From contig NC_043024.1 in assembly GCF_006345805.1 (NCBI RefSeq), positions 15,996,001 through 16,060,000 of the forward strand: a stretch of DNA of 64,000 nucleotides. The letters run 5' to 3'. The position numbers and the translations under genes are program-made. This DNA is from Octopus sinensis. Taxonomy: Eukaryota. This document shows positions 3,601-42,646 of the stretch, in pieces. The stretch's first letter is position 1; each line of letters opens with the position of its first letter. The notes under the pieces were generated by a model. It saw only the letters and a program-made list of their open reading frames with translations, did not search any database and was not told where the DNA came from.

Positions 3601-4241
3601 ACAGGGACAAGAAAAAAGTCCTAACAACGGATGGCTTCCTAGCCATTGTGCATCTTGATGGCATTCAGATTAAAAACTGTGAAAAGAGAAGAATCATCAT
3701 GGAAGCTGATGAGTTTATTAATCCTCTCTGAACTCTTGTATTGAATTTCCATTCAATAACTTGTAGAGTTGAAATAATTTCCAAGAGATTAGTTAATCTG
3801 AGATTTGATAAGATCAATTACTGTGAGAAGAGGGAAGAGGGTAGAATCTCTAGAAGTGCTTTCTCATAAAAATATTAAAAAACTTTTGTAACCAGCTGTC
3901 CGACCTCTTAAACAATTTCGAAACTTCAGGGAAGAAAACTGAAACTATTTAATTATTTTGCTTCTATTGCCAACAGGATAATTTCCCTTATTTGCTTCCT
4001 CTCATCTACACACATCACTAATTTTCCTTGTCATAATTTTCTGCAATTCATCGTTAGTCTTCTCTCTAGTGTTTTAATGATTCACCACATTTTATGTTAG
4101 AAATCATCATAGTTTCATTAAAAGCGGGGTCAAAGACTGCCATAAATATATTCCAGATTATATAATGAAATTTTCTTTGGTCAACATCTCCAACAGAAAA
4201 ACTCAAACTATTTCCAATCCTTTTGATTCTATTCTCAACAG

Positions 4242-4359
4242 GATGATTTCCCTGGTTTAATTCCTCTCATACACAAATATCTTGATCATGTTGACTACGA
4301 TTCCAGTAAAAGACCTAAAATAATGCAATACCTGAAATTTCTCTCAGACAAAGCTGCAG
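4242..4359 (+). CDS. GCLC: GCLC-like copy A exon, DDFPGLIPLIHKYLDHVDYDSSKRPKIMQYLKFLSDKAA(G)
   Basis: AG at 4240-41 and GTAAG at 4360; 118 nt. Matches GCLC FPGLIPILNSYL…ILNYLKLIKKRASG. Confidence 0.93.
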
Positions 4360-4759
4360 GTAAGATGATTCTCATTTGTTTTCATCAATATTAAACAAAT
4401 GTTATTAGAAACATTCAACCTTAAAACTCATTGCTGAAAGTATTTATTTAAATAATAATTCGACATAGGTTTCCATAATTGATATTTATATAATACTAGC
4501 AGAGTTATCTGGCGTTGCCCGTGTTACATGCAATTGAAGAATTAGACTTTTCTGTTATATTTTCTGTAATTAACTGGAATACCTATGTTTCGAATTTCAT
4601 CAAAATTGAAGATGAGGGTTATGAGGTTTCTATAATCGATATTTATATAATATATATCCATCATTCCATTAGCAATTGAAATCCAAATGTTTAAAATTAA
4701 GGAAAATATCGCGTTTACTACACAAAGAAGATTATCTCCCATGCAATAGAAATGTCCAA

Positions 4760-5440
4760 GCTTGCTTCCCAATCACATGGTTCTAGGTTCAGTCCCACTG
4801 CGTGGCATTTTGAAAGTGTCTTCTATAAACTCGGGTCAACCAAAGCTACGTGAGAGGATTTGGTAGACGGAAACTGAAAGAAGCCCGTCGTATGTGTGTC
4901 TGTGTTTGTCCCCCCACCACTTGACATTCAGTGTTGGTGCGTTTACATCCATGTAACTTATTAGATCGGCAAAAGGACTGATAGAATAAGTGCGAGGCTT
5001 TAAAAAGTGCTAATGTTGTTTGATTCCACAGAAATTCACCAAGGCAGTGCTCCAGCATGGCCGCTGTCAAATGACTGAAGCTAGAAGACAAAACACACAC
5101 AGAGAGATGCATACACATATAGTAAAGACCGTTTTTGGTCGCGAATGACCATTGCATTGCACCTAGAAAGTTCCCATCTGAGGCAACTGTCTGGGCAAGG
5201 TTGTTCATGTAAGACCAGGCATCACCCATGCATACCAGCTTCCCTTCTCCACGTAACCGATGTTATCCAAGGGAAAGGCTAAAGGGGCCGATACAGTTTG
5301 GCACCAGTGACATCGCAGCTCATTTCTGCAGCTGAGTGAACTGGAGCAACGTGAAACAAAAAGAAAACCCAGTCCGGGAATTGAACTAGCATCCCGAATA
5401 TAAGTCCCACACTTAACCACTGTGGTATGCACCTTCACAA
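4760..5440. mobile_element. Two adjacent tRNA-related SINEs in opposite orientation in the last intron of GCLC copy A
   Basis: Family motifs shared with other SINEs in the window. The block is duplicated in inverted form at about 23990-24715. Confidence 0.75.
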
Positions 5441-5516
5441 AAAGTTGTCGACAAACAACCACGTGATTTTATATATACACATATGATTGAAAACGTACGC
5501 ACTCATTAATATTTTA

Positions 5517-5549
<33 letters not shown>

Positions 5550-5848
5550 TACTTTTGCTCTTGTACTTGTTTCAGTCATTTGACTACGTCCATGCTGGAG
5601 CAACACCTTAAAGGGTCGAACAACACCTTAAAGGGTCAAACAACACCTTAAAGCGTCGAACAAATCGACCCCAAGACTTATTCTTTGTAAGCTTCGTAGA
5701 AACAATTATCACTGCTAAAACTATTAGGGCTTTATCTATTTGTACCTCATTTGACGAAGCCAGGATATTGTTACAGAATACACCAAATAATTTCCATCTG
5801 AAATGAAAAACGAATTATTTATTATTCTAATTTATTTTTATCTTACAG

Positions 5849-6015
5849 GAAAGATAATGACAATGGCCCAATGGACAAGACAGTTTGTAAGAAATCATGA
5901 AGATTACAAGAATGATTCTGTTGTCAGTGAGAGAATCGCTTATGATTTTATGATGGAATGTGAAAAGATTGTCAACAGTGAAGAACGATTTCCACAAGCT
6001 TTTATCAGGAGTTAA
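5849..6015 (+). CDS. GCLC: GCLC-like copy A terminal exon, (G)KIMTMAQWTRQFVRNHEDYKNDSVVSERIAYDFMMECEKIVNSEERFPQAFIRS*
   Basis: AG at 5847-48 and TAA at 6013-15. Matches GCLC [26 protein letters not shown]. Confidence 0.93.
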
Positions 6016-7899
6016 GGAAACATTTTAAGAACTTTATCGCATATTTAATTAACTGAGCTACAGAGAACGTTGTCTACATAACCAAACTAATTTACATCAC
6101 ACTAACTAAACAGGATATATATATATAAATGGAATTAAACACAGGTTTTATTCAAATTCTTTTACTTCCGACACATGTTTCAAAGATATCACTTGTATTA
6201 TTCAAAAAACAATCTCTTACAAATTATCTCTTCACATAATATTAACTTGTTAAATATTGGTACATTTACTAATACTAACATTAATTTAGCTAATACCATC
6301 CATCCCCCTAGAAATATTAATAACAATGTTATTGTATTTGAAGTCAATTACAACACAATCAAGTTTGTGTCAAGTAACTCTAAAATTAAAAATCCCATAT
6401 TCCATTGTAAAATTACTAATGGTAATGAAGTATTTTTTTTTATATAAGAAGCACATCTTCTCAGTTATCTAAAAGAATTTCTAATCATTACTATACATTT
6501 AGGGATAGGAATAAACGTAACAGTACAGGGCTTAATAAATTAATTTTGGATCTAAAAGACCACAATAAACAATTTAATTTAGATTGGTTGATTCTTTCAA
6601 TCTCGATACCTTATGACAAGGAATTCTGTCTTTGTAATTCTCAACTATTTTTTATACTTTTTTCTAAAAATCCGCTTGTAAACACGGTTATAGAGCGTGC
6701 ATACCGATGTAAACATTGACTCCAGCATGGCCGCAGTCAAATAACTGAAACAAGCAAAAGAAGACACAAATAAAGGAATATAAATATCATATTTAGATAT
6801 ACATACACACATTCTTACATTTTCTTGTTTCGGTCATTTGACTGCGGTCAAGCTGGACCACTACCTTAAGGGATTTGAACCAAATGAATGGCCCCCAGAG
6901 CTTATTCTCTGTAAGCCTAGTACTTATTACTCTGATATAAGAAATCAATTTCGTTATAGCTGCCACAAAAGGTGTATTTTCTGTCATGAAAAAGTACAAA
7001 AAAATGTCAGCTGGAGGAAGGAGATTGTCAGAGGTTGGCGAGATGCAACGGCATAATTCTGCTTAGCGATGGCATCTGGAAAATGTATAACTGCTGTCAT
7101 TCACAGAAAAATTATTATTTTACCGTGAGAAGAGCGCTGTTGAAGTGTTAAGTGAAATTTGGTAATCAAGGATCGAACCCATGCTATGCCTGCATGAAGC
7201 CACTACAAATACATTGTGGAATAAAAAATTTACCTACTGTCATGGAAAAAGTGTAACAGTAAAAATGCAGAATTATTGGAGTAATGGGCATTCAAAAACA
7301 TATGAATGTATAGAAATGTATGAATGAAGTCTTTAAAGTTTAAGATTCAAATTAAGGAAGTGCAATAATAATGTTTAGCAGTTCAAAACTGTGAGCAATG
7401 AAATGCAGAATTAGGTCGGCTGATCGTGCGAATCAAATGTTGATTGCTTCACTAAAATCTGCAGATGGTATGGGTTACTTCCTTTGGGTTGTTTAAATAT
7501 TAGTAATATATGGTAGATAGAAGGATCCATTGGAAGGGCCCTATTATCGATATTTTCAACAGTCTAAGTATGTCATGAGGTTTCCAGACATGAGTTCTAC
7601 TCACGTGTCAAATAAAGTATGAAAGTGATAATGTCTGCAAAATTAGAAATAGGACACACAAAAAATCAATATTCAAAGTAATCGAACATAAACCATGAAA
7701 TGGGATATTTCCTTTGAGTGTTTAAAAAATAGTGCTATGAGTTATTTCCCTTGGGTGTTTAAAAAATATTTGTTTTATGAGGTAGATATAAAGGTCCCTT
7801 TTTTCATCAATTTTCATTGAAATCAATAAAACGATGTAGGAGGAGTTAGCTAACATATAATCAAATACAGAGATCGTGCCCCTCGTGGCCACAGTCCAC

Positions 7900-8660: not shown

Positions 8661-8990
8661 ATAAAGCTTCCCGTTATATATATATATACATACATATATC
8701 TGTATATATACATATCTATATATATATATACATACATACATATATATATATTTACATATATATATATAAGTATATATATAAATATATATATAAATATTTA
8801 TACATATATATATTACATATATATATATATACATACATATATATTTATATACATACATATATAAATATATATATACATATATATAAATATATATATAATA
8901 TATATATATATATCTATATATATATATATCTATATATATATATATATATATATCATATATATTATACATATATATATATACATACATATA

Positions 8991-9037
<47 letters not shown>

Positions 9038-9155
9038 ATAAACACTATTATTTCTAAATCTCTCAAAGATATTCAGTAACATCGATGTTTCCTGGAACTA
9101 AAACAACAGTAACAATCGTCCTATCCAGGATAGCCACATTATGTTGCCAAATAGT

Positions 9156-9198
<43 letters not shown>

Positions 9199-9677: not shown

Positions 9678-9720
<43 letters not shown>

Positions 9721-9878
9721 ACGAACTTCTTTCGGTTGCTGTCTACCTAACTCACAAGGCTCGAGGCTATGGTAGAAGACATTTACCCAAGGTGCCGCGC
9801 AGTGGAACTGAAACCAGGACCAAATGGTTGGGAACCAAGCTTCTTACAACACAGCAACGCCTGCACCTATCTATATAA

Positions 9879-9971
<93 letters not shown>

Positions 9972-10179
9972 GTGAAATAGAAAGATGAATAATCTTGTAG
10001 TAGATTAATCAAAAGTTTAACCGATACCTTAGTAGCAAAAATCACAGCAGTAAACAGCACGGTTGGAGGTACAACCATCTGGCGTTGCAACCGTGCGTTG
10101 GTGCGGATAATTGAAATTAAAACATTATTGGTGAATTGAAGAAATGGAGCTGAACGCAGATTGAACAGAAATCGTTTTA

Positions 10180-10269
10180 TTTCATTCTACACGTGTTTCG
10201 AAAGGCACAAATTACCAAAATCCGATTGAATAATGGGACCATATTGTGTCTTTCTCTTCAGGAAGAAAA
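10180..10269 (-). ncRNA. Type I hammerhead ribozyme in the inverted repeat of PLE1
   Basis: Reverse complement of 12703-12792. Confidence 0.85.
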
Positions 10270-12702
10270 AAGGAAATCCGTTGGAAAAACAATTCCCGGA
10301 GATCGCGGGCGGCCTGTATCGTGACGATTGTCTGTTTTACCTGCAAAACACCACGAACAGAATAGTGCAGAAAACTAAGAGCAGGTTAGCTAGGTTTTTT
10401 AATAGAATGGGCATGAGTATAGTTTTTGATAATGAACTCACCAAGGCTAATTTCCTAGACGTTACACTTAACCTTAATAGCGACTCATACTGCCCTTACC
10501 ATAAGCCTTCCACTAATTTGAAGTATGTCAGTGTCTTCTCAAATCATGCCAAAACCGTAACAGACAATTTGGTTAAAAACATCTCTCTAAGATTGTCTGG
10601 CTTGTCCGCCAGTGCCGATATTTTTATGCAGAAAGCGGATTTTTATAACGCCGCACTATCCAAGGCCGGTTATAGGCAGAAGGTAATTTATATTGATCCG
10701 GCCCTTCCGATGCCATCATTCGGTCATCAGGATAGGGCCGTATATAATAACATTAACATTTTAAGTAAGGACGGGAGCGCGGCGGATGCCGGGGTAGTCG
10801 CTCCCGCATTTAATTTAGCGAACAAGGATAATTATCGGTCCGGGAGGTCTTACACTAACCCAAGACCCGTTATTCATCCGAGAATCACCCACCCGAATGC
10901 GAGAGCTGGCGTCCCGACCCATCACACTGATAGGAATAAGCATATATGGTTTGTAATCCCCTTTGGTAAGCAGATTAGAACTAACCTCCCCCTCATGTTT
11001 AGACAAGCCATCGCCAATAACTTCCCCAGAAATTCCAAATATTACTCCACGGTTAACTCACATAAAGTTAGGATAGCTTTCTCCAACACACTAAAAACCT
11101 CGCCCAGATAATCGCCTCCCATAATAATAGGCTACTTACTAAGACCCTATCACCTTTTTCCGGAGGCACAGCCTCTTCCGCTCCCGGTTTAATGCTCAGT
11201 AGGAATAATTATAGTAGTAATAATGATATGAGAGCCAGTACAGTGACACATAATCTCAGCTCCAGCCAGGGAGTACCCACTAGGGGTATAGTTATAAATA
11301 GGGGTGTTGTGGTTGACGGTAACAATGGGAGTAGGGTAGAGAGCCCCATTAGCATCCCCAGCATCATTTCCCGCAATAGCAGTACCACGGGCAGTAGCAA
11401 TGACAGCACTCTGATAGATAGTGGAGAATCAGGGGTTATTCCTATAGTTAATAGTGACGTAGTGGAAAATAGAGTAGTAAGCGGCTGCAGGTCTCGGAAC
11501 GAATATAGTGACAGGAACGCAGTTCTAATTTCAGAAACCAATCCTAGCAGATTAAGATTCACGTCGGCGAACTCCAAGATCAAAAACGCCGTCTACCAAT
11601 GCAAGGTTTACAATGCAAGGTTTACTTTTCGGGACGTGAACAAGCGCCAGACCACGGGACTCAGTAAGCTAATATGGCGACTGAAGGATGCGAACTTAAG
11701 CTATAGGCTGGAATGGTCAATTTTGTCGGTGGCCCTCCCATTTGATAGGGGCAGAAGACAGTGCAACCTTTGTGTAAACCTTGCAATGTAGGGGCATCAT
11801 CCTCAAGATTGTCTTTGCGTGTCTCCAACCATTACGCAACTTTTCGGGACGTGAACAAGCGCCAGACCACGGGACTCAGTAAGCTAATATGGCGACTGAA
11901 GGATGCGAACTAAGCTATAGGCTGGAATGGTCAATTTTGTCGGTGGCCCTCCCATTTGATAGGGGCAGAAGACAGTGCAACCTTTGTGTCTCCGAACTCT
12001 TCCATATTTTGTTTGCCAGAGGCCGGATGGTAAACGGCTCTTACAGTCGGCTTTTCGATGCCCCCATTGGCGGCGTTACACTTATCTGGCCTTTAAATAG
12101 CGTTTATAAATAATACCGGCACCCATAGCCCTTGGTAACAAATTCTGAAATAGCCTTTAAGATATCTACGATTAACCACTGCAAGGGGAATTACTCCTGT
12201 AAGACAACGGGGCTTGGTTTTTTCACAGCGGGGGGGTTTTCCTTGACAAGGCAGGCTTAGATGAACACACACACACATAAAACATAATATATATATATTT
12301 TTTTTATTTTTTTCTTTCTGCCACCCAACGGTTATCACGGCAGTAGCCACTGACAGCCGAACGATCAAACGCACACACGTACACAAAAAATGTTTTCTAC
12401 CCCTACGCCAACACACACATATATAGAACAGTATACACACACCACGTCTCAAAGTAGATTTTTTCTCGCCCCTTATAAAACATCCAATATTCTTTAAATA
12501 GTCAGAACTTTATTCTCGGTCACAAAGAACATATTACACCCACACCCACATGATTGACCGATGCCTGACCCGTTGAATTCTTCAGCACACCGGTTCTCAA
12601 CATACACTGATAAACAGTTTTCGCCATGGGCTCTTAGGAGCACAGTTCGATTTGTTTTTTGCTCCGCCTCTGTTCTGTTTTGTTTTTTCCAACGGATTTC
12701 CT

Positions 12703-12792
12703 TTTTTTTCCTGAAGAGAAAGACACAATATGGTCCCATTATTCAATCGGATTTTGGTAATTTGTGCCTTTCGAAACACGTGTAGAATGAAA
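12703..12792 (+). ncRNA. Type I hammerhead ribozyme at the 3' end of PLE1
   Basis: CTGAAGA at 12711-17, stem II GAAAGACAC/GTGCCTTTC, GAAA at 12773-76, palindrome ACACGTGT and GUA with cleavage after 12784. Stem I is tttttttc/gaatgaaa. Confidence 0.88.
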
Positions 12793-12852
12793 TAAAACGA
12801 TTTTGTTCAATCTGCGTTCAGCTCCATTTCTTCAATTCACCAATAATGTTTT

Positions 12853-13660
12853 ATATATAATATATATATATAATATATATATAATATATATATATATATA
12901 CACACACACATATATATATATATATTACACACGTACACACACACCCACATACACATGCATACACACACACACAAACATGCACGGGACACACCCAGACATA
13001 CACACATACACCTATATACACACGCCCACACACCTACATACACAACATATAAAACCGCCCACACACCTACATACACACACATACATACACACACATACAC
13101 GGACACCCCACACATACTTACATACATACACCTATACACACACGCCTACACACCTACATACACACACATGCATAACACACACACACATGTACTCACATAT
13201 ACACACACATATACGCACATACATGTATACCACACACATGACACACACACACCATACGCACATGCATGCATGCATGCACACGCGCACACCTACACGCATA
13301 CACACACACACACGCACGTACACATACATACATACACACACGCATACATACACCCATACACATACATGCATCCGACACACACATACATACACACTCACAC
13401 ATACATACACACACACACACTCACTCACACACCTGTATGTTACGCGCACACACATGCACATACACACACTTCCCCACACCCACACGTACATACATACACA
13501 CTCACACACATACACACACACACACGGACATACATCTATGCACACACATACATACATACATACTCACATACATTCATCGCACACACTGCCACCCAGACAT
13601 ACACACAGACACACTCACACATCCACACACATACATACGTACGCGCATACTCGCAGGCAC
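12853..13660. repeat. Compound (TA)n/(CA)n low-complexity tract
   Basis: Seen directly; source of the His/Thr-rich spurious ORFs. Confidence 0.95.
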
Positions 13661-14520
13661 GCGCACATACGCACTTACGCCCGGCGCGCGTGCATACGCG
13701 TCGCATACACCTCGCCCTTGGACCTGACGAGACCTCCCGCCCGTTCCTGGGACCGTCGCGTGTCGTTGGTTTTCCCACGCCTGTCTCCGCGGTACCACTC
13801 TTCCATCTTCCCTCAGCTGGAGTCCTTTTTCCTAAACCCCCCCCCTTTTTCGTTACACACACGCGCCACACATATACACAACCTTGCCTATATATATACA
13901 TCACTCTACACACATTCAATCTACTCATTAATAACACCACGACACTGGACACACACACACTACTACTCAACACACGCTGGCACGCTACATACGCCCCCAC
14001 CCCTTCCCCTCCCTCCCTTCCTCCTTCCTTCTTTTTCTTACTACTGACCTCCCTTCCTCCTTCCTTCTTTTTCTTACTTACTGTCTGCTAGCTGACCACT
14101 AGTCTCGCCCTACCTCACACGCCTACACACAGACGCACACACTAACACACACATATATTTTTTTTTTTTTTAATCTCGCCTCACATACACACACGCACAT
14201 GCACACACTCACACATACACACACACATCTGTTGGGTTACCAACCTTGTCTCCACTCTTTGCCTTTAAAAAACCCACTTTGCTTTGTTATCGTCAACATC
14301 CGCCTTTCACCATGTGCAACTCGTAAAACACCAGTCGTCTTTTTTCTCTTTCCCTGTTGCCCGCTCTGGGATCTCTTTTCCTCTCTCTTCCTTCTTTATG
14401 TTTCCGACGAAGAGCTCCGCTCGAAACGTCATACCCCCCTGCTTCCATCTCCTGAGCGCCTATAATAATAATACTGTAATTGTTCCTGTTGTTGTTGTTT
14501 TTTTGTTTCCCTTTTGGATA
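13560..14520 (+). mobile_element. Non-coding ~1 kb element, copy 1, with hammerhead-like motif at 14400-14434
   Basis: Near-identical second copy at 34350-35350. Contains CCGACGA-A-GAGC(TCC)GCTC-GAAAC-GTC. Confidence 0.8.
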
Positions 14521-14569
<49 letters not shown>

Positions 14570-14570
<1 letters not shown>

Positions 14571-17342
14571 CATCATCATCATCATCATTTAACGTCCGCT
14601 TTCCATGCTAGCATGGGTTGGACGGTTCAACTGGGGTCTGGGGAGCCCGAAAGCTGCACCAGTCCAGTCAGATCTGGCAGTGTTTCTACAGCTGGATGCC
14701 TTCCTAACGCCAACCACTCCGAGAGTGTAGTGGGTGATTTTATGTGCCACCGACACAGGTGCCAGACGAGGCTGGCAAACGGCCACGCTCGGATGGTGTT
14801 TTTTATGTGCCACCGACACAGGTGCCAGACGAGGCTGGCAGACGGCCACGCTCGGATGGTGTTTTTATGTGCCACCGACACAGGTGCCAGATGAGGCTGG
14901 CAAAACGGCCACAATCGGATGGTGCTTGTTACGTGCCCACAGCACGGAAGCCAGTCGATGCGGTACTGGCTACGGCCACGTTCGGATGGTTTTCTTGTGT
15001 GCCACGTGCCACGGCACTGGTACCACAAGGATACAAATTCCATTGATGTTCACTATTTTGATTTGTTTTGATTTGATTTTCACTTGCCTCAACAGGTCTT
15101 CACAAGTGTCACAAGAAGGAAGGTATGCACAGGTGGACTGACTACGTCCCAGGTAGGGGCCATGGGTTATGGCCTGACTAGTCTTGCCGGGTCTTCGGAT
15201 GGTGTTTTTATGTGCCACCGACACAGGTGCTAGATGAGGCTGGCAAACGGCCACGATCGGATGGGGTTTGTCATGTGCCCACCGCACTGACTACAGCACT
15301 GATGGATTTCTTGTGTGCCACAGGCACTGGTACCACAAGATACAAATTCCATTGATGTTCATCTATTTTGTCTATTTTGATTTGATTTGATTTGATTTGA
15401 TTTTCACTTGCCTCAACCGGTCTTCACAGGTGTCACAAGAGGAAGGTATGCACAGGTGGACTGACTAGTCTTGCCGGTCTTCGGAAGGTGTTTTTATGTG
15501 CCACCGACACAGGTGCCAGATGAGGCTGGCGAACGGCCATGATCGGATGGGTTTGTTACGTGCCCACAGCACGGAGGCCGGTCGATGCGGGAACTGGCTA
15601 CGGCCACATTCGGATGGTTCTCTTGTGTGCCACCGGCACTGGTACCACAAAGTGTGTGCCACCGGCACTGGTACCACAAAGATACAGATTCCATTGATGT
15701 TCATCTATTTTGATTTGTTTTGATTTGATTTTGATTTTCACTTGCCTCAACAGGTCTTCACAAGTGTCACAAGAAGGAAGGTATGCACAGGTGGACTGAC
15801 TACGTCCCAGGTAGGGGCCATGGGTTATGGCCTGACTAGTCTTGCCGGTCTTCGGATGGTGTTTTTATGTGCAACCGACACAGGTGCTAGATGAGGCTGG
15901 CGAACGGCCACGATCGGATGGTGTTTGTCATGTGCCCACAGCACGGAGGCCAGTCGATGCGGTACTGGCTACGGCCACTTTCGGATGGTTTTCTCTTGTG
16001 TGCCACCGGCACTGGTACCACAAAGATACAAATTCCATTGATGTTCATCTATTTTGATTTGTTTTGATTTGATTTTGATTTTGATTCTCACTGCCTCAAC
16101 AGCCTTCACAAGTATCACAAGGAGGAAGGTATGCACAGGTGGACTGACTACGTCCCAGGTAGGGGCCATGGTTTATGGCCTGACTAGTCTTGCCGGGTCT
16201 TCGGATGGTGTTTTTATGTGCCACCGACACAGGTGCTAGATGAGGCTGGCGAACGGCCACCACGACGGATGGTGTTTGTTATGTGCCCACAGCACGATGG
16301 CCAGTGATGCGGTACTACTGACTACGGCCATGTTCGGATGGATTCTTGTGTGCCACCGGCACTGGTACCACAAGCGGTACTGACTACTTTTTATGTGCAC
16401 CGACACAGGTGCTAGATGAGGCTGGTGAACGGCCACGACCGGCTGGTGTTTGTTATGTGCCCACAGCACGATGGCCAGTGATGCGGTACGGACTACGGCC
16501 ACGTTCGGATGGATTCTTGTGTGCCACCTGCACCGGCACTGGTATCACAAGCGGTACTACTATACGGCCACGTTCGGATGGATTCTTGTGTGCCACCGGC
16601 ACTGGTACCACAAAGATACAAATTCCATTGATGTTCATCTATTTTGATTTGTTTTGATTTTCACTTGCCTCAACAGTTCTTCACAAGTGTCGCAAGAAGG
16701 AAGGTATGTACAGGTGGACTGACTACGTCCAGGTAGGGCCCACGGGTTATGACCTGACTAGTCTTGCCGGGTTCGGATGGTGTTTTTATGTGCCACCATG
16801 TTTCCACATCACGGAGGCGAGTCGACGCGGGTACTGGCTACGGCCACGTTCGGATGGTTTTCTTGTGTGCCACAGGCACTGGTACACAAAAGATACAAAT
16901 TCCATTGATGTTCATCTATTTTGATTGATTTTCACTTGCCTCAGCAGGTTTCACAAGTGTCACAAGAAGGAAGGTATGCACAGGGGATCGACTACGTCCC
17001 AGGTAGGGGCCACGGGATATGGCCTGACTAGTCCTGCCGGGTCCTCTCATGCACAGCACACTCCATAGGACTCGGTCTTCAGTCATTTCCTTGGTGAGAC
17101 CTAAAGTTCGAAGGTCGTGCTTCACCACCTCGTCCCAGGTTTCCTGGGTCTACCTCTTCCACAGGTTCCCTCAACTGCTAGGGTGTAGCACTTCTTTACA
17201 CAGCTGTCCTCAACCATACACATCACATGACCATACCAGCGCAGCCGTCTCTCTTGCACACCACAACTGACACTTCTTAGGTTCAACTTTTCTCTCAAAA
17301 AGTATACACTCTGACGATTATGAACACTGACATTACACATCC

Positions 17343-17345: not shown

Positions 17346-17393
<48 letters not shown>

Positions 17394-17488
17394 CCTGTTT
17401 AGTTAGTGTGATGTAAATTAGTTGGTTATGTAGACAACGTTCTCTGTAGCTCAGTTAATATATGCGATAAAGTTCTTAAAATGTTTCC

Positions 17489-17655
17489 TTAACTCCTGAT
17501 AAAAGCTTGTGGAAATCGTTCTTCACTGTTGACAATCTTTTCACATTCCATCATAAAATCATAAGCGATTCTCTCACTGACAAACAGATCATTCTTGTAA
17601 TCTTCATGATTTCTTACAAACTGTCTTGTCCATTGGGCCATTGTCATTATCTTTC
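17489..17655 (-). CDS. GCLC: GCLC-like copy B terminal exon (…YKNDLFVSERIAYDF…AFIRS*)
   Basis: Reverse complement of 5849-6015, 167 nt. It differs only at gatctgtttgtc versus gattctgttgtc. Confidence 0.92.
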
Positions 17656-17954
17656 CTGTAAGATAAAAATAAATAGAATAATAAATAATTCGTTTTTCAT
17701 TTCAGATGGAAATTATTTGGTGTATTCTGTAACAATATCCTGGCTTCGTCAAATGAGGTACAAATAGATAAAGCCCTAATAGTTTTAGCAGTGATAATTG
17801 TTTCTACGAAGCTTACAAAGAATAAGTCTTGGGGTCGATTTGTTCGACTAAAACCCTTTAAGGTGTTGCTCCAGCATGGACGTAGTCAAATGACTGAAAC
17901 AAGTACAAGAGCAAAAGTAATATATATATATATATATATTTATTATATAGAAGG

Positions 17955-18005
17955 AGCTTCTACAGGACTAGAACTGTTTCATTCAAGAGAAATCTTCAGG
18001 AAGCT
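17955..18005 (-). ncRNA. Type I hammerhead ribozyme at the 3' end of PLE2
   Basis: Reverse complement of 23757-23807. Confidence 0.82.
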
Positions 18006-18239
18006 AGTTAACAAGAATTGTATTGGCATTTATACATTTAGGCAGGTTTATAGGGGTGGTGGTGGGGGACTTTTTGGGGGTAGGCATAGCGCAAAAAAAT
18101 CATACTTGGGGGAGTGGTCAAGGAGTCAGTGGTAAATTAGATAGAAGAATAAACAAAAGAATAAAAAAAGAATAAAAAAATTTAAAAATATATAGAAGAA
18201 TAGAGTTTTAGGTAAATAAGGAAATTCTCACTTATACCT

Positions 18240-18313
18240 ATACACATATGTATACATATATACACACACACACACACACATATATATACATACACACATA
18301 CATACACACACAC

Positions 18314-18359
<46 letters not shown>

Positions 18360-18614
18360 ATATACATACATATATCTACCTATATATATATATATATATA
18401 CATATATATACATATACATACATACACATATACATGCATATACATATACACACTCACATGTATATATACACACACACGACCACACATACACATACACACA
18501 AAAAAATATATACATACACACACATACACATACACACATACACACACATATCCACATACACACATGCACACACAACACACAAGTCCCTATATACTCATAT
18601 ATACATATACACAC

Positions 18615-18645
<31 letters not shown>

Positions 18646-19274
18646 CATACATATGTGTACCTATTCATACCTACACATACACACATATATATACATACAA
18701 ATACAAACCCATTCCCTAATTTTAATTTTTTATCTTCATTTATTACTTTTGTTATCTTTGACCGCTGGTCACAAGCATCTTGGCTAAGACAGCTAGTCCC
18801 TTTTATCTTTCTACTTGAGCACAAGCACTCACTCACGCACGCACACTCATTAGCACGCACACACACTCATTCGTACACTCATACACATACAGGCACGCAC
18901 GCGTTATATTCATACATACATACATCTACATTCATACACGTTTATACACATACGTACGCGTACCTACAGATTCATGTCTACAATCTTAGAAGACTAGTCT
19001 ATACATATACACCAAATATATATACACACATACATATACACCTACATACAAATACATACATACATATATATACACACATATATATATATACACATATACA
19101 CATACACACATATATATATATATATATATACACACATCCGCATACACACATACATACATACACCCATACATACATACATTATACACATATAACACACCCA
19201 CACGTATACATATACATACATATACGCGCATGCATACACATACAAATACATACACAACACATATACATATACAT

Positions 19275-19326
<52 letters not shown>

Positions 19327-19768
19327 CATACATACACATACATACATACATATACATATATACACACACACATACATACACATATACACATACACGCACA
19401 TACACATATACATACGTACCCATACGCACACACACACACGCGCATCCATATATACACATAAGTACACACATGCGTAAAAGTATACAAATATCTATGCTTA
19501 CACATACACACACACACACGCCACTCCTTATGTTCATACTTACATGCGTACTCAAAGAATAAGTAATAAAATATATATACATGCAGTTATTCATACATGC
19601 ATACTCAAAAAATAATAAATAATAAATAATAAATAATAAATATTAAGTATATATACGTGCAGTTACCTATTATACAGACGGATACATACATATAAACTTA
19701 CACACACATATATATATATATATAATATACATATATATACATATAATATATATATATATATATACATA

Positions 19769-19813
<45 letters not shown>

Positions 19814-20721
19814 TACACATATGTACATATACATACACACATACATAACTCTACTTACCTACATATACCTAAACACACGAGCGTACACGTATATGTACAT
19901 ATACACATACACATACACAACAATATACATACATACATATACATACACGCATATATACACACACAGATATATATATACCCATATTATATATATATATATA
20001 TATTATATTATATATATATATCTACACATATACACACATACACACACATATACATACATATACATACACACACATACACACATATATATTAATATTATTA
20101 TTATATATATATATATACACATATAATGTATATAATATACACATACATACATACACATACATATACACACATACACACACACACCATACATATATACACA
20201 TATACACACACAAACATACATATACATACACACCATACATACACATATATACACAATATATATATATATATATATATAATATATATATAATACATATATA
20301 CAGTACATGTGTGCAAACATACATACATACATACTCATACACACTCACACACTACATATACATATAACACACACTTACACACACACATAATATATATATA
20401 TATATTAGATATATATACAGATATATGTATATATACATACATTATATATACATATATATACATACATACATATACATACACACATACACATATGTACACA
20501 TACACACACATATTCACATATATATATATATATATATATACATATATATACACACACATATATATATATACATATATACATACACATATATATATATATA
20601 CACATACACACACACACATATATATATACACACACCTACACATACACACATATATACATATATACATACATATACACACATACACACACACACACATATA
20701 TGTACATACATACACATACAC

Positions 20722-20756
<35 letters not shown>

Positions 20757-20789
20757 CATGCACATACGTATAACTCTACATACCCACAT

Positions 20790-20828
<39 letters not shown>

Positions 20829-21022
20829 ATACACACACATATATATACACATATATATGTGTATATATACACACACATATATATACCCATCTACAATCTG
20901 TATATACACACACATACCTGCACATACACATAACTCTACATACCTACATATACATCGAATACTCGCGTACACTCATAATACACATATATAATATACATAT
21001 ACACATACACATACATATACAC

Positions 21023-21068
<46 letters not shown>

Positions 21069-21150
21069 AATAAATAATATATATATACACACGCACACAT
21101 ATATATACATATATACATATATATATACACACACACACACATACACATAC

Positions 21151-21205
<55 letters not shown>
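18240..21205. repeat. ~3 kb compound (CA)/(TA) low-complexity region inside the PLE2 insertion
   Basis: Seen directly, with unique islands at about 18700-18830 and 19520-19690. Confidence 0.95.
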
Positions 21206-21208
<3 letters not shown>

Positions 21209-23382
21209 ACAATTGAGGGTAAAGTTAATTAGTTATTAATCAATTTCACCAAGTATTCAGTATGTAAAAGGACCATTATTTTTTTGAGTAAACATTGTCT
21301 GAGAGAAAATTTCTTAAGTAGTGGAAAAAGCTAAAAACTTATTTGGCTGCTATTTCTAGAAAGTTCAGTATGTGGCAAAGTAATTTATTTTACTAAGCCC
21401 TAATTATATAATTTTATATACACACATACACATACATACACCCATACATATACACATACATATGCATACACACATATATACATATATACATATACACACC
21501 ACACACACACACACATACATATATATATTTTTTTTACGTACATACACACACACACACATAATACATGCGTATATTCCTACAATACCCATACATTTTATAC
21601 ATATATACGATACACATATACAAGCGTGCACATACAATATGTGAAAGGTCTTAGGAGAAAAGTCGGAGGTGCTAGGGAACGGTGGGATTGGGGGGGTTTG
21701 TGGGTGGGGTGTCATCAATCTGGTTGCCGGGTAGGTTATAGTTCTTGTAGTTTGCATAATTCTTATGCATGCAATTTGGGGAGTGTTCTGAAATTGTTAA
21801 GGAGAGGGCCTTTGGCGAACAAGATCTCTAGGCTCTCCGAAATGCAAAGGTCACAGCAGGTATGGCCTCCTGTGTACGAACGCGCCTTCGTAGTAGTTTC
21901 CACTTTGTCTTGAAGGGGATGGAGTTCCTTTTAAGGTACCAGATGTGGGCGGCGAGGGTTAGTTTGGTTGGATTTATCCGGTCGCCGGAACGAGTGTGTG
22001 GTGTGCGTACCAACGGGTCTTAAAGCTGTTTGACGTCATTCCGATGTAGGATTTTCTTTTATCGTCAGGGCCTGATCTTACCTCGCATGTATATACTAGG
22101 TCCTCTGTAGGCAGTTGTGTTGAGGGGGCAGGTGGTTTTATCAGGCAGTTGCAATGCTATCGGACGTGGGATGGGTCTCAGAAAAAGTAGATATGTTAAG
22201 TTTATTCACTTGTTGTTGGCTAGGTTCCTGGCTAGATTGGCGTGGTAGAGTAGGAGAGTCTAATAGTGTTCTTATTTAGGATAGTGTAGTACTTATGTTG
22301 GGTGGGGAAGTGTTCTGTAGGAGAGTGAAGAAGATTTTAGCTACAGGTGTTAGCGACCTCACGGTTGAAGGGGGGGGTTGTACCAGCTAATGTGTCTTCG
22401 TCTATTTTTCTGGGTTGGCGTGGGGCTATACTAGTATAGGTAATCTTATCTTTAAGCCACTGCGGGCCAGGGCTCGTTGTAATAGGGGGCTGCGGCCTTA
22501 AAGATATCTTCCGTGGCGGACAGGCTAGAAATTCTTATTGAGACACTTTTTACTAGGTTATCTAATATATTTTTGGGGTGGTTGGAATTAATATCTATAT
22601 ATCTAAGGGATTCATTTGGTTTGTGGTACGGGTAATAAAGTGAGGTTTTTAAGTCGAGGGTGACGTCAAGGAAGTTAGCTTTGGTTAAGTTGGATTCTAA
22701 GGTAATCCTAAGGCCTAAGGCCTAAGTAATCCGTGGTCCTGGGGTTTATTTTGTGGAGGGCGAAAAGGCCGTCATCGCGGTAAAGACCACCGGAGAGGCC
22801 TGTGAATAGGGTTTTCAGCCTATGGAGGATGAAAAGGCCCACTAGGTCACTTATTTCAGCCGAGTCGCTAGCACCCATGCTGACGTCGAAGGGGGTCACA
22901 GATTTTTTGTTGATCCAGTGGGATCCGTCGTGGAAAAGAAAAGTCTTACATGCGTGGAGGATCACATCTTGCTCAGCCTCGGTGATGGTGGAGGACCTCC
23001 TGGCGAAGTTAATCGCGTCGATCAGCAAGCTCTCCGATATGGAGGCGTAGTAATCCTCGATATCCAGTTGTAGGAATCGGGTGTTGCTTTTGTCAGGTAA
23101 ATCCCGGAACCAGGTTATTGCCTCGGAGGTCCTATTCCAGAGTGGAAGGGGGATGAAGCTTCACGCATTTTGGTAAAATCCTGTCCAGGATCTTCTTGCT
23201 GACGGATCCGATGTCAGACTTGGTTGGGTTAATCAGTCGGACCGACGGTTTATTTCGAAATGGTCTTTGTGGTCTTTCAGGGTGAAGTGTGGGGACTTCA
23301 CCCTCAGGGGTTCAGTTCGGTCATCTTTAAGGGAGGTGGCAATCTCTTTCCCGGCTAAGTTGGTTTCAGTTAGCACTGTGTC

Positions 23383-23445
<63 letters not shown>

Positions 23446-23756
23446 GATATATGGGTGTGTGTGTGTATGTATGAGTGTATGTATATATATGTGTGGTGTG
23501 TGTGTGTATATATGTATACATATGTGTATAGGTATAAGTGAGAATTTCCTTATTTACCTAAAACTCTATTCTTCTATATATTTTTTAATTTTTTTTTTTA
23601 ATTCTTTTTTTATTCTTCTATCTAATTTACCACTGACTCCTTGACCACTCCCCCAAGTATGATTTTTTTGCGCTATGCCTACCCCCAAAAAGTCCCCCAC
23701 CACCACCCCTATAAACCTGCCTAAATGTATAAATGCCAATACAATTCTTGTTAACT

Positions 23757-23807
23757 AGCTTCCTGAAGATTTCTCTTGAATGAAACAGTTCTAGTCCTGT
23801 AGAAGCT
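23757..23807 (+). ncRNA. Type I hammerhead ribozyme in the inverted repeat of PLE2
   Basis: agcttc-CTGAAGA-T·TTC(TCTT)GAA·T-GAAA-CAG(TTCTAGTC)CTG-TA-gaagct: 6-bp stem I, 4-bp stem III and GUA site at 23799-801. Confidence 0.82.
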
Positions 23808-23890
23808 CCTTCTATATAATAAATTAATTTTACTCCGCTATGTATTGAGTACCTTATTTACTGTGGTTAACCCCGAATCAACCCGGGACC

Positions 23891-23934
<44 letters not shown>

Positions 23935-24952
23935 AAAAATTAATGAGTGCGTGCGTTTTCAATCATATGTGTGTTTGTGTGTATAAAACCCCGTGGTTGT
24001 TTGTCGACAACTTTTTGTGAAGGTGCATACCACAGTGGTTAAGTGTGGGACTTATATTCGGGATGCTAGTTCAATTCCCGGACTGGGCTTTCTTTTTGTT
24101 TCACGTTGCTCCAGTTCCCTCAGCTGCAGAAATGAGTTGCGATGTCACTGGTGCCAAACTGTATCGGCCCCTTTAGCCTTTCCCTTGGATAACATCGGTG
24201 ACGTGGAGAAGGGAAGCTGGTATGCATGGGTGACGCCTGGTCTTACATGAACAACCTTGCCCAGACAGTTGCCTCAGACGGGAACTTTCTAGGTGCAATG
24301 CAATGGTCATTCGCGACCAAAAACGGTCTTTACTATATGTGTATGCGTCTCTCTGTGTGTGTATGTGTGTGTGTGTTTTGTCTTCTAGCTTCAGTCATTT
24401 GACAGCGGCCATGCTGGAGCACTACCTTGGTGAATTTCTGTGGAATCAAACAACATTAGCACTTTTTAAAGCCTCGCACTTATTCTATCAGTCCTTTTGC
24501 CGATCTAATAAGTTACATGGATGTAAACGCACCAACACTGGATGTCAAGTGGTGGGGGGACAAACACAGACACACATACGACGGGCTTCTTTTAGTTTCC
24601 GTCTACCAAATCCTCTCACGTAGCTTTGGTTGACCCGAGTTTATAGAAAACACTTTCAAAATGCCACGCAGTGGGACTGAACCTAGAACCATGTGATTGG
24701 GAAGCAAGCTAGGACATTTCTATTGCATGGGAGATAATCTTCTTTGTGTAGTAAACGCGATATTTTCCTTAATTTTAAACATTTGGATTTTAATTGTTAA
24801 TGGAATGATGGACATATATTATATAAATATCGATTATGGAAACCTATGTCGAATTTTTATTTAAATAAATACTTTCAACAATGAGTTTTAAGGTTGAATG
24901 TTTCTAATAACATTTGTTTAATATTGATGAAAACAAATGAGAATCGTCTTAC

Positions 24953-25070
24953 CTGCAGCTTTGTCTGAGAGAAATTTCAGGTATTGCATTATTTTAGGTC
25001 TTTTACTGGAATCGTAGTCAACATGATCAAGATATTTGTGTATGAGAGGAATTAAACCAGGGAAATCATC
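24953..25070 (-). CDS. GCLC: GCLC-like copy B exon, identical to copy A 4242-4359
   Basis: Exact 118-nt reverse complement of 4242-4359, with intact AG/GT. Confidence 0.92.
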
Positions 25071-26215
25071 CTGTTGAGAATAGAATCAAAAGGATTGGAA
25101 ATAGTTGAGTTTTTTGTTGGAGATGTTGACCAAAAAAATTTCATTATATAATCTGGAATATATTTATGGCAGTCTTTGACCCTGCTTTTAACGAAACTAT
25201 GATGATTTCTACATAAAATGTGGTGAATCATTAAAACACTAGAGAGAAGACTAACGATGAATTGCAGAAAATTATGACGAGGAAAATTAGTGATGTGTGT
25301 AGATGAGAGGAAGCAAATAAGGGAAATTATCCTGTTGGCAATAGAAGCAAAATAATCAAAAATAGTTTCAGTTTTCTGATGGAGATATTGACCAAATGGT
25401 TATAAAATTTGCTGATATTTTTTGTGAAGGAAATATCTGAAAAACTGAAGCAGAAATAAGAAAAATTTCATGATGTTAATTTAGGATATTTTTATGACAT
25501 TCTTTGACATCTGTCCCTTTTAATAAAATTATGATGATTTCTAACATACAGACAAAGCCATAAAGCTTGGGGTATCACAGTGAGATGGGTGTTAGAAAGA
25601 GAGAGAAAGAAATAGTATGGTAGAAGGGACAAACAAATCTCTTTGGAACCATTTCATCTCTACAATTGAACCATTCTGCTTAATCCATGATTTCATGGAA
25701 GAGTTTAATAACCACAATTGTCATGCAGATTCTTCATTCCTCAGAGTAATTGGAACTTATAGAACAATCTAGAATCTTTTCTATAGACTATTTCTTATTG
25801 AAAAAATCATTACCAATTTCTTTGGATTAAGAATTTTGTGTGGACATTGATGTGTTTCACAAGTTCCTGAGGTATCCAGGGCATATTCTATTGTCACCAT
25901 ATGTCGATCAGTGCTTTATATACACACACACAAAGACACACACACTCACCCCATCCTAACCTCTAAAGCCAATCCCCCAAATCATTGATGCTTGAAGGAG
26001 AGACAAAAAGGATAAATTCTTTTCAGTTCCACATTACTCCTCCTTTCCCCCACCCAAACACACCTACAGTGTCCCTTGAAATAAATAATATTCTTTTACG
26101 TTAACACAACATGGTGGACAGGTCAGTTTTAGCTTCCCTACTATTATAATGTAAACCTTTTTGAACTCATAATATTCTGTGCGTGTATACCAATATTCCA
26201 CTGAACTTTTTAATA

Positions 26216-35350: not shown

Positions 35351-35354
35351 GGAT

Positions 35355-39430: not shown

Positions 39431-39510
39431 AGCCTGGGCAAGTGACGGCCCACATAGCTGCAGTTGCATCAATTTGTTTAATGCTTATTGTACAGAAAAT
39501 CAATATTTAC

Positions 39511-42596: not shown

Positions 42597-42646
<50 letters not shown>

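What the first reader, a model, noticed from the sequence alone, without database searches (positions are those of the whole stretch)
3932..25378. Sharp identity step between paralogues: probable 2.2 kb gene-conversion tract over the last two exons
Seen: exon 2610-2680 differs from its paralogue at 17 of 71 nt. The next exon is 118/118 identical. Intron, SINEs and the start of the 3' UTR also match closely from about 3932-6125 to 25378-17385. Copy B alone has a ~6 kb PLE in this tract. Copy A alone has a 20-bp triplication at 5601-5660. These private changes argue against a plain assembly duplication. Inference: recent ectopic conversion between inverted paralogues gave both proteins the same C-terminus.
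Basis: partly seen in the sequence, partly recalled or inferred. Interest (0 to 1): 0.72.

Follow-up and report, generated by a model that had tools for sequence, protein, structure and literature searches.

The report
Gene conversion between two octopus GCLC-like genes
Two tail-to-tail copies of an octopus glutamate-cysteine-ligase-like gene are about 25% different in their upstream exons but share a 2.2 kb, 97.8%-identical 3' end, a clear but ordinary case of one gene copy overwriting part of its neighbour.

Summary
Copy A (+ strand, 3933-6127) and copy B (- strand, 25377-23894 plus 17921-17381) align over 1995 positions with 43 mismatches (97.8% identity). The exon before the tract differs at 17 of 71 bases, and the introns between are almost unalignable. 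The genes are C-terminal parts of glutamate-cysteine ligase catalytic-subunit-like paralogues (Pfam GCS) from an octopod genome.

Homology continues past the outer border at about 65-75% identity, so this is a step in identity, not the end of a duplication.

Upstream, B is collinear with Octopus vulgaris gene g2 (protein P0007). Inside the tract, A and B group together with 96-100% bootstrap support. They also share a pseudo-exon duplication and three SINE-like insertions. No O. vulgaris or O. sinensis homologue has those insertions at that place.

Interlocus gene conversion is therefore well supported. The donor was probably A.

O. vulgaris g1 and g2 carry an independent tract of about 370 bp over the last exon, so 3' homogenisation recurs in this family.

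- The C-termini differ by two residues.
- A has a further private 128-bp insertion.
- The 6-kb B-only insert is a decayed element with a reverse-transcriptase-like remnant, and its assignment to the Penelope-like elements is unverified.

This is a known kind of event and of modest interest.

The parts
3933..6127 (+). Conversion tract, copy A. It holds the 3' end of the intron with a pseudo-exon unit, the penultimate exon, the last intron with SINE-like repeats, the last exon and about 110 nt of 3' UTR.
   Evidence: 97.8% identity to copy B over 1995 aligned positions.
23894..25377 (-). Conversion tract, copy B, outer part (pseudo-exon unit, penultimate exon, most of the last intron).
17381..17921 (-). 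Conversion tract, copy B, inner part (end of the last intron, last exon, start of the 3' UTR). It has no isolated substitutions against A, only indel-type differences.
17922..23893 (.). B-only insertion of about 5.97 kb within a (TA)n run. It holds inverted repeats at 17938-18379 and 23824-23389 (95% identical), about 2.2 kb of (ATAC)n/(AT)n, and a decayed reverse-transcriptase-like frame (YRDD motif) at about 22400-23150 on the - strand.
   Evidence: No Pfam hit and no hammerhead ribozyme.
4467..4652 (+). A-only insertion of 128 bp (4496-4623), flanked by a 29-bp direct duplication (4467-4495 and 4624-4652, 2 mismatches). B has one copy of the 29-mer.
5601..5660 (+). A-only triplication of a 20-bp unit inside a SINE 5' fragment. 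B has a single copy.
4242..4359 (+). Gene A penultimate exon (118 nt). It is identical to the B exon at 25070-24953.
5849..6015 (+). Gene A last coding exon including the stop codon (6013-6015). The B counterpart is 17655-17489. The only difference is TCTG against CTGT at 5917-5920.
2610..2680 (+). Gene A exon -2, outside the tract. It has 17 of 71 mismatches against the B exon at 30765-30695.
2165..2246 (+). Gene A exon -3, outside the tract. With its flanks it is about 73% identical to the B exon at 33703-33626.
30695..30765 (-). Gene B exon -2.
33626..33703 (-). Gene B exon -3. It has a 1-nt deletion (TT to T) at its start and a 3-nt deletion, relative to A and to O. vulgaris g2. The 1-nt deletion breaks the frame unless it is a consensus error.
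39508..50479 (-). Further upstream exons of gene B: about 50479-50341, 47961-47849, 43124-43038 and 39614-39508. They correspond to residues 306-458 of P0007.
3889..4016 (+). Pseudo-exon unit: a degenerate tandem copy of the intron end plus the first 40 nt of the penultimate exon, with an in-frame stop. The tract border (3932|3933) lies inside it. The B copy is 25377-25292.
4757..5692 (.). Three SINE-like interspersed repeats in the last intron (4757-5097, 5124-5363, 5541-5692). Both copies have them at identical positions. Other copies in the window are only 74-94% identical.

Best explanation
A and B are convergent (tail-to-tail) paralogues of a glutamate-cysteine ligase catalytic-subunit-like gene in an octopod genome. 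Their 3' ends lie 11.4 kb apart. The duplication that made them is at least as old as the split from the O. vulgaris/O. sinensis lineage. Upstream exons and their flanks are 72-77% identical and the introns are otherwise unalignable.

Later, homology-directed repair copied about 2.2 kb from one copy into the other. This is interlocus gene conversion, inferred to follow a break in one copy. The copied stretch runs from inside the intron before the penultimate exon to a (TA)n run about 110 nt past the stop codon.

The copied block carried a tandem pseudo-exon unit and three SINE-like insertions that had arisen in one copy only. The donor was probably A. The pseudo-exon architecture, including a diagnostic 8-nt deletion, is shared with O. 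vulgaris gene g1. It is absent from g2, which is the orthologue of B.

Since the transfer the copies have gained 2.2% substitutions. B has gained a 6-kb retroelement-like insertion. A has gained a 128-bp insertion and a 20-bp triplication.

Shown: the identity step, homology continuing across the border, the change in tree topology, and the shared derived insertions. Inferred: the repair mechanism, the direction, and the order of events.
For: - Identity step: 26% against 2.2% mismatches, Fisher p = 3e-54.
- Both flanks just outside the border still align to each other and to the single-copy O. sinensis intron. The border is therefore an identity step inside older homology.
- B upstream of the tract is collinear with O. 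vulgaris g2 over exons and introns, about 5.6 kb aligned.
- Neighbour-joining trees: (B,g2) 86.5% at exon -3; (A,B) 96.5% at the penultimate exon and 100% at the last exon.
- Distances: upstream A-B 0.22-0.34, at least as large as A or B to the O. sinensis homologue. In the tract A-B is 0.006-0.033, against 0.08-0.17 to that homologue.
- The SINE-like repeats of the last intron are absent from the last introns of g1, g2 and the truncated gene copies ('frag') at L001-L003. Dispersed copies elsewhere are only 74-94% identical.
- The pseudo-exon unit is present in A, B and O. vulgaris g1, and absent from g2 and frag.
- An independent tract of about 370 bp exists between O. vulgaris g1 and g2: intron 94.8%, last exon 97.0%, ending at the stop codon. 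Their other exons are 73-78% identical.
Against: - No reads or depth data were available, so the assembly could not be verified.
- Several A/B differences are 1-nt homopolymer deletions, nearly all in B. They look like consensus errors and show imperfect polishing.
- The orthology of A is weak: (A,g1) has only 54% bootstrap support, and A is about as close to frag. The direction therefore rests mainly on the pseudo-exon architecture.
- B's flank just outside the tract (25380-25626) is itself g1-like and lacks a 19-nt segment that A retains. One event does not explain this.
- The inner border coincides with the end of all detectable homology and with a microsatellite. It is not an independent mark of the tract end.
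Confidence: 0.8

Rival explanations
1. Assembly artefact. One 3' end is a haplotype copy or a collapsed and re-expanded repeat that the assembler placed wrongly, inverted, next to a paralogue whose true 3' end lies elsewhere or is diverged.
For: - The two O. sinensis contigs L001 and L003 differ by about 3% and may be haplotigs. Haplotype-level divergence of 2-3% therefore occurs in octopus assemblies.
- Many A/B differences are homopolymer 1-nt indels typical of long-read consensus errors.
- The inner 540 nt carry no isolated substitution at all.
Against: - The window has no N and is contiguous through both copies and the 11-kb spacer.
- Each copy is joined to its own diverged upstream intron exactly at homologous positions. 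Overlap assembly would not make that join at 65-75% identity.
- The copies differ by a 6-kb insertion, a 128-bp insertion, a triplication and 43 substitutions.
- An independent parallel tract exists in a different species and assembly.
Confidence: 0.07
2. A recent partial inverted duplication rather than conversion. A 2.2 kb 3' fragment of one gene was copied, for example by fold-back or template switching, and happened to replace or abut the 3' end of an older paralogue. This made a chimeric gene without homologous templated repair.
For: - The two tracts are inverted and close together, as template-switch products often are.
- The inner border lies at a microsatellite and at the end of homology.
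- B is inverted relative to the tandem g1-g2 order in O. vulgaris, and it is flanked by inverted satellite blocks. The locus has therefore been rearranged.
Against: - The outer junction lies at precisely homologous intron positions in both copies. Reading frame and splice sites are preserved. Homology-driven exchange predicts this; random insertion does not.
- The same family shows a second homogenised tract, in direct orientation, in O. vulgaris.
Confidence: 0.1
3. No transfer at all. The 3' end is simply under much stronger purifying selection than the rest of the two genes.
For: - The C-terminal exons are more conserved between species (84-92%) than exons -3 and -2 (75-82%).
- The first 60 nt of the penultimate exon are identical even to O. 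vulgaris g2.
Against: - About 85% of the tract is intron, SINE-like repeat and UTR, and it is as similar (97-99%) as the exons.
- The tract carries insertions absent from all outgroup homologues.
Confidence: 0.01

Closest known systems
Interlocus gene conversion between the duplicated human fetal globin genes HBG1 and HBG2 (Slightom et al. 1980; recalled from my own knowledge, not checked here)
   Same: A discrete tract of near-identity lies inside older, more diverged paralogues. It covers exons and intron, with one border at a simple-sequence repeat. Here the inner border is a (TA)n run, and the B-only insert also sits in a (TA)n run.
   Different: The globin genes are direct tandem repeats. 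Here the copies are inverted and convergent, and the tract covers the 3' end. The globin case had population and functional data; none exist here.
Arm-to-arm conversion in inverted repeats and palindromes (primate Y-chromosome palindromes; the Drosophila Hsp70Aa/Ab inverted pair; from my own knowledge)
   Same: Inverted, closely spaced copies are kept similar by intrachromosomal conversion. Conversion between inverted repeats does not delete the spacer.
   Different: Those arms are homogenised over their whole length and stay above 99.9% identical. Here only the inner 2.2 kb of a much longer homology is homogenised. It has since drifted to 97.8% and picked up large private insertions.
The O. 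vulgaris g1/g2 GCLC-like pair on OX597840.1 (locus L004)
   Same: It is the same gene family, and g2 is the orthologue of B. It also shows a sharp step: 73-78% identity in exons -3 to -1, then 95-97% over the last 194 nt of intron plus the last exon.
   Different: The tract is much shorter (about 370 bp) and ends at the stop codon. The genes are in tandem, not inverted. The penultimate exon is not included. The event is independent: g1 and g2 are closer to each other than either is to A or B.

Membership tests
Interlocus (ectopic) gene conversion tract | The two sequences are paralogues whose homology extends beyond the tract. | tested here: met
   Collinear blocks are A 1-63, 2157-2326, 2593-2736 and 3761-3794, against B 39517-39454, 33711-33543, 30782-30638 and 25665-25632. 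Identity is 72-82%. The flanks at the border align to each other and to the O. sinensis intron.
Interlocus (ectopic) gene conversion tract | A discrete stretch of significantly higher identity, including unconstrained sequence. | tested here: met
   97.8% over 1995 positions against about 74% upstream, p = 3e-54. Introns and SINE-like repeats are 97-99% identical.
Interlocus (ectopic) gene conversion tract | Phylogenetic incongruence: orthologues group outside the tract, and paralogues of one genome group inside it. | tested here: met
   (B,g2) 86.5% at exon -3, plus intron collinearity. (A,B) 96.5% and 100% in the tract. Each segment has few sites (110-300 nt).
Interlocus (ectopic) gene conversion tract | Non-reciprocal transfer, with an identified donor left unchanged. 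| tested here: inconclusive
   The pseudo-exon architecture is shared with O. vulgaris g1 and absent from g2, which points to A as donor. A's own orthology is weakly supported (54%).
Interlocus (ectopic) gene conversion tract | Both copies really exist in the genome (spanning reads, normal depth). | not testable with these tools
   No reads are available. The only evidence is indirect: private differences and homologous junctions.
Glutamate-cysteine ligase catalytic subunit (Pfam PF03074 GCS) | Significant match to the GCS domain. | tested here: met
   B C-terminal 179 aa: E = 4.8e-56, profile positions 199-372. A 146 aa: E = 6.1e-44. The closest proteins are O. vulgaris and O. sinensis 'GCLC-like'.
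Glutamate-cysteine ligase catalytic subunit (Pfam PF03074 GCS) | A complete, intact coding sequence. | tested here: inconclusive
   A runs off the window start. B is seen only from residue 306 of P0007 onward, and a satellite begins at 51799. B exon -3 has a 1-nt deletion that breaks the frame, or is a consensus error.
Penelope-like element (for the B-only insert) | A reverse transcriptase of PLE type. | tested here: inconclusive
   There is a decayed frame with FLQLDIEDYY, GASDSAE and GLYRDDGL motifs. It has no Pfam hit at E <= 0.01. Its homologues are short unnamed proteins. A few of the weaker ones carry PF26215 (3) or PF00078 (1).
Penelope-like element (for the B-only insert) | A GIY-YIG endonuclease domain. 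| tested here: not met
   No such ORF or Pfam match exists in 17922-23893. The element is too decayed for this to exclude a PLE origin.
Penelope-like element (for the B-only insert) | A hammerhead ribozyme in the terminal repeats. | tested here: not met
   An Rfam scan of 17800-24000 at E <= 1 gave only low-complexity false positives and no hammerhead.
SINE (for the repeats in the last intron) | Short, non-coding, dispersed in many diverged copies. | tested here: met
   Copies at 74-94% identity occur elsewhere in the window and in all O. vulgaris and O. sinensis loci.
SINE (for the repeats in the last intron) | A Pol III (tRNA-derived) head. | tested here: inconclusive
   B-box-like motifs are visible by eye at 4781-4793 and, reversed, at 5375-5395. 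No tRNA was called there by Rfam or ARAGORN.

The most novel reading that the evidence does not exclude
Octopods carry a lineage-specific cluster of GCLC-like paralogues whose 3' ends are homogenised again and again, independently in different species. The window has a 2.2 kb tract between convergent copies. O. vulgaris has a tract of about 370 bp between tandem copies. B's flank just outside the recent tract is g1-like, which hints at an older event. This would mean that conversion, perhaps with selection, keeps a common C-terminus while the rest of the proteins diverge. From my own knowledge, the C-terminal region of GCLC takes part in binding the modifier subunit. Satellite-flanked inversion of B would have brought the two 3' ends face to face.
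Probability: 0.25. Interest if true: 0.45.

Novelty: new member of a known kind. Interest (0 to 1): 0.27.

Why it matters
- It is a clean, well-bounded example of interlocus gene conversion in a cephalopod genome, where such events are little documented.
- In this family, trees built from the C-terminal exons will mislead about orthology.
- A second, independent tract in O. vulgaris shows that the 3' end is a recurrent target. That gives a small natural system for studying tract borders at microsatellites, at indels and at a 6-kb heterology.
- The octopus GCLC-like expansion itself may deserve functional study.
- It does not change what is known about the mechanism.

Tried and rejected
- Classing the B-only insert as a Penelope-like element. 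Pfam gave no hit on the RT-like frame or on the related ORFs at 10233-11111 and 11192-11791. Rfam found no hammerhead. The protein search returned only short unnamed homologues. The label stays unverified.
- Naming the species. The closest DNA is O. vulgaris, O. sinensis and O. bimaculoides at 80-92% identity. The window is therefore another octopod. No protein of the window itself was found in the database.
- Positional orthology of A. The spacer matches to O. vulgaris loci are short and not collinear, so they are probably transposable elements. The match of about 620 bp between L004 and L001 is a TE absent from L002.
- My first inference that B was the donor. It rested on the 19-nt deletion shared by B's flank and the real exon unit, and on the similarity between B 25548-25462 and tract segment 4093-4174. 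I dropped it once O. vulgaris g1 showed that the multi-unit architecture, including units with that deletion, is g1-type.
- Two age strata inside the tract. By mismatch columns the difference is not significant (Fisher p = 0.12). Only the count of isolated substitutions (0 in 540 nt) suggests it. It is post hoc, so I report it as a hint only.
- Purifying selection alone as the cause. Rejected because of the identity of introns and SINE-like repeats.
Full report
**What the window is.** The window has no N and about 40% G+C. It is rich in microsatellites and interspersed repeats, and it ends in a satellite of at least 12 kb with a 66-bp unit.

The exons in the finding translate to the C-terminal part of a glutamate-cysteine ligase catalytic subunit. 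The spliced peptides match Pfam GCS (PF03074) at E = 4.8e-56 for B and 6.1e-44 for A. The nearest proteins are 'glutamate--cysteine ligase catalytic subunit-like' proteins of Octopus sinensis and O. vulgaris. DNA identity to O. vulgaris, O. sinensis and O. bimaculoides loci is only 80-92%. The window therefore comes from another octopod.

**Gene models.** Gene A is on the + strand. Its exons are 2165-2246, 2610-2680, 4242-4359 and 5849-6015, with the stop codon at 6013-6015. The window starts inside the preceding exon.

Gene B is on the - strand. Its exons are about 50479-50341, 47961-47849, 43124-43038, 39614-39508, 33703-33626, 30765-30695, 25070-24953 and 17655-17489. The two genes are convergent, and their stop codons lie 11.4 kb apart.

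**Checking the observation.**
- Exon 2610-2680 differs from its B counterpart at 17 of 71 bases. The next exon is 118 of 118 identical.
- BLAST gives three inverted blocks at 97.5%, 95.0% and 98.3% identity.
- After removing the B-only insert, A 3933-6127 aligns with B 25377-23894 plus 17921-17381. There are 1995 aligned positions, 43 mismatches (97.8%) and 12 small indels.
- Identity is about 97-100% in every part of the tract: the pseudo-exon and intron, the SINE-like repeats, both exons and the 3' UTR.
- Private changes are confirmed. B has an insert of about 5.97 kb (17922-23893) inside a (TA)n run. A has a tripled 20-bp unit at 5601-5660.
- The last exon is not identical. TCTG against CTGT at 5917-5920 gives DSVV in A and DLFV in B. 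O. vulgaris g1 and g2 read DSVV, so A keeps the ancestral form.

**Is it a step, or the end of a duplication?** A sensitive comparison finds a collinear chain upstream:
- A 1-63 with B 39517-39454, 76.6%
- A 2157-2326 with B 33711-33543, 72.8%
- A 2593-2736 with B 30782-30638, 71.7%
- A 3761-3794 with B 25665-25632, 82%

The rest of the introns do not align. The intron before the tract is 1.2 kb in A and 5.3 kb in B.

The last 100 nt outside the border still align with each other and with the single-copy O. sinensis intron. They do so only at about 50-65% identity. From position 3933 onward identity is 98-99%. Homology is therefore continuous and identity jumps. Upstream blocks against tract: about 109 of 415 mismatches against 43 of 1995, Fisher p = 3e-54.

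The inner border (6127 and 17381) lies at a (TA)n run in both copies. Beyond it no homology is detectable. It therefore cannot be separated from the end of the old duplication.

**Outgroup evidence.** I fetched four related loci:
- A truncated five-exon gene copy ('frag') in O. sinensis, at L001 and L003.
- The same truncated copy in O. vulgaris, at L002, which lies at the very start of OX597822.1.
- An 82-kb O. vulgaris locus, L004 on OX597840.1, with two tandem genes. These are g1 (3' end at L004 1-5784) and g2 (P0007, 597 aa).

B upstream of the tract is collinear with g2 through exons and introns, with about 5.6 kb aligned. Examples are 33327-32531 with 59186-59960 at 80%, and 32503-32376 with 65795-65922 at 94%. 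B is therefore the orthologue of g2.

Neighbour-joining trees give (B,g2) 86.5% and a weak (A,g1) 54% at exon -3. In the tract they give (A,B) 96.5% at the penultimate exon and 100% at the last exon.

Upstream, the A-B distance (0.22-0.34) is at least as large as that of A or B to the O. sinensis homologue. In the tract A-B is 0.006-0.033, against 0.08-0.17 to the homologue. This switch in topology is the classical sign of interlocus conversion.

**Shared derived structures.** The last intron is about 1.5 kb in A. It is only about 360-520 bp in frag and g2. The extra DNA consists of three SINE-like repeats (4757-5097, 5124-5363, 5541-5692).

Other copies of these repeats in the window and in the octopus loci are 74-94% identical. 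None lies in the last intron of g1, g2 or frag. A and B have them at identical positions with about 97% identity. They must have inserted in one copy after the split from the O. vulgaris lineage and then been copied into the other.

The tract also begins inside a tandem pseudo-exon unit (A 3889-4016, B 25377-25292). This is a degenerate copy of the intron end plus the first 40 nt of the penultimate exon, with an in-frame stop.

**Direction.** O. vulgaris g1 has three such units: 3748-3873, 4127-4203 and the real one at 4459-4636. Their boundaries match those in the window, and the pseudo-copies share the same 8-nt deletion. g2 and frag have a single unit.

The tract architecture is therefore of g1 type. 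B is a g2 orthologue, so B most likely received it, and A was the donor. I give this moderate confidence, about 0.6, because A's own orthology to g1 is weak.

B's flank just outside the tract (25380-25626) is also similar to the g1 inter-unit sequence, at 72-74%. It lacks a 19-nt segment that A, g2 and frag retain. This hints at an earlier transfer or at unit loss in A. I could not resolve it.

**Age and internal structure.** Tract divergence is 2.2%. Orthologous B-g2 introns differ by about 6-40%, and the best-aligned long blocks by about 17-20%. The transfer is therefore much younger than the species split, but it is not very recent.

The inverted repeats of the B-only insert differ by about 2.3% in substitutions, similar to the tract.

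The inner 540 nt (5549-6127) carry no isolated substitution. They hold only indel-type differences. At the rate of the outer part about ten substitutions would be expected, P about 3e-5. This could mean a later, shorter conversion bounded by the 6-kb heterology. By mismatch columns, however, the contrast is not significant (p = 0.12), and the test is post hoc.

Nearly all the 1-3 nt indels are deletions in B, mostly in homopolymers. The 1-nt deletion that breaks the frame of B exon -3 is of the same kind. These may be consensus errors or decay of B. I cannot tell which.

**The B-only insert.** It holds three things:
- inverted repeats of about 440 bp
- about 2.2 kb of (ATAC)n/(AT)n
- a decayed frame with reverse-transcriptase-like motifs (FLQLDIEDYY, GLYRDDGL)

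A related, younger element with 172-bp inverted ends (98.8% identical) lies in the spacer at 10118-12853. There are no Pfam hits, no GIY-YIG domain and no hammerhead ribozyme. Homologues are short unnamed proteins. A few of the weaker ones carry PF26215 or PF00078, and one O. vulgaris protein is 94% identical over 45% of the query. It is a retroelement remnant. 'PLE' is possible but untested.

**A parallel in another species.** In O. vulgaris, g1 and g2 are 73-78% identical around exons -3, -2 and -1. They are 94.8% identical over the last 194 nt of the last intron and 97.0% over the last exon. Similarity stops at the stop codon, with 52% identity downstream.

g1 and g2 are closer to each other there (0.077) than either is to A or B (0.13-0.17). 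This is an independent conversion in that lineage. Homogenisation of the 3' end is therefore recurrent in the family.

**Rivals.**
- An assembly artefact cannot be excluded without reads, but it is unlikely. The junctions lie at homologous intron positions next to flanks that are only 65-75% identical. Each copy has large private insertions. A separate assembly of another species shows the same kind of tract.
- A homology-independent partial duplication is disfavoured by the same precise, frame-preserving junction.
- Purifying selection alone is excluded by the identity of the introns and SINE-like repeats.

**Comparison and verdict.** This works like textbook interlocus gene conversion: the fetal globin genes, with a border at a simple repeat, and inverted-repeat or palindrome arm conversion (both recalled from my own knowledge). 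A search of the held papers found nothing on conversion or expansion of GCLC-like genes in octopus.

It is a new example of a known kind. Interest is modest. The most interesting open point is the recurrent homogenisation of the C-terminal exon across an octopus-specific GCLC-like gene cluster.

Noticed in passing
window 51799-63900, and 14738-16533: A satellite of at least 12 kb with a 66-bp unit (53% G+C, about 96-97% between copies) lies beyond the last B exon seen in the window. Related 63-, 174- and 348-bp tandem repeats lie in the A-B spacer in the opposite orientation. B is therefore flanked by inverted satellite blocks, which could mediate its inversion.
   Followed up: partly
window 17489-50479 against L004 (O. 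vulgaris OX597840.1): In O. vulgaris g1 and g2 are tandem (head to tail). In the window A and B are convergent. If A is the g1 orthologue, the whole B gene is inverted in one lineage, or one assembly has it mis-oriented.
   Followed up: partly
L004 5423-5781 against 71785-72153: There is an independent homogenised tract of about 370 bp between O. vulgaris g1 and g2. The intron part is 94.8% identical and the last exon 97.0%. It ends at the stop codon. The other exons are 73-78% identical.
   Followed up: yes
window 33703-33626 (- strand): B exon -3 has a 1-nt deletion (TT to T) relative to A and O. vulgaris g2. It shifts the reading frame. B is either a pseudogene or carries a homopolymer consensus error.
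   Followed up: partly
window 10118-12853: This is a 2.7-kb element with 172-bp inverted ends (98.8% identical) and two ORFs (10233-11111 and 11192-11791). The first ORF has a GLYRDDCL motif related to the remnant in the B-only insert. It looks like a young insertion of the same retroelement group. It has no Pfam hit.
   Followed up: partly
window 13530-14573 and 34341-35412: A direct repeat of about 1.05 kb, 91.7% identical, occurs in the A-B spacer and in a B intron. It adjoins long (AC)n/(TA)n arrays and is probably a transposable element or microsatellite-rich repeat.
   Followed up: no
L002 (O. vulgaris OX597822.1:1-23148); L001 and L003 (O. sinensis): A truncated five-exon GCLC-like copy (products of 158-164 aa) sits 9.5 kb from the very start of an O. 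vulgaris chromosome record. In O. sinensis it occurs on two contigs about 3% apart, which are either haplotigs or a recent duplication.
   Followed up: partly
window 4242-4301 against L004 71335-71394: The first 60 nt of the penultimate exon plus 15 nt of intron are 100% identical between the window and O. vulgaris g2. The rest of that exon is about 70% identical. This points to a very constrained DDFPGLIPLIHKYLD motif or to a mosaic history.
   Followed up: no
window 49940-50008 (- strand): The only Rfam hit at gathering score in 1-52500 is a weak tRNA match (31.1 bits). It lies next to a copy of the SINE-like repeat family (49695-49912) and is probably a SINE head.
   Followed up: no
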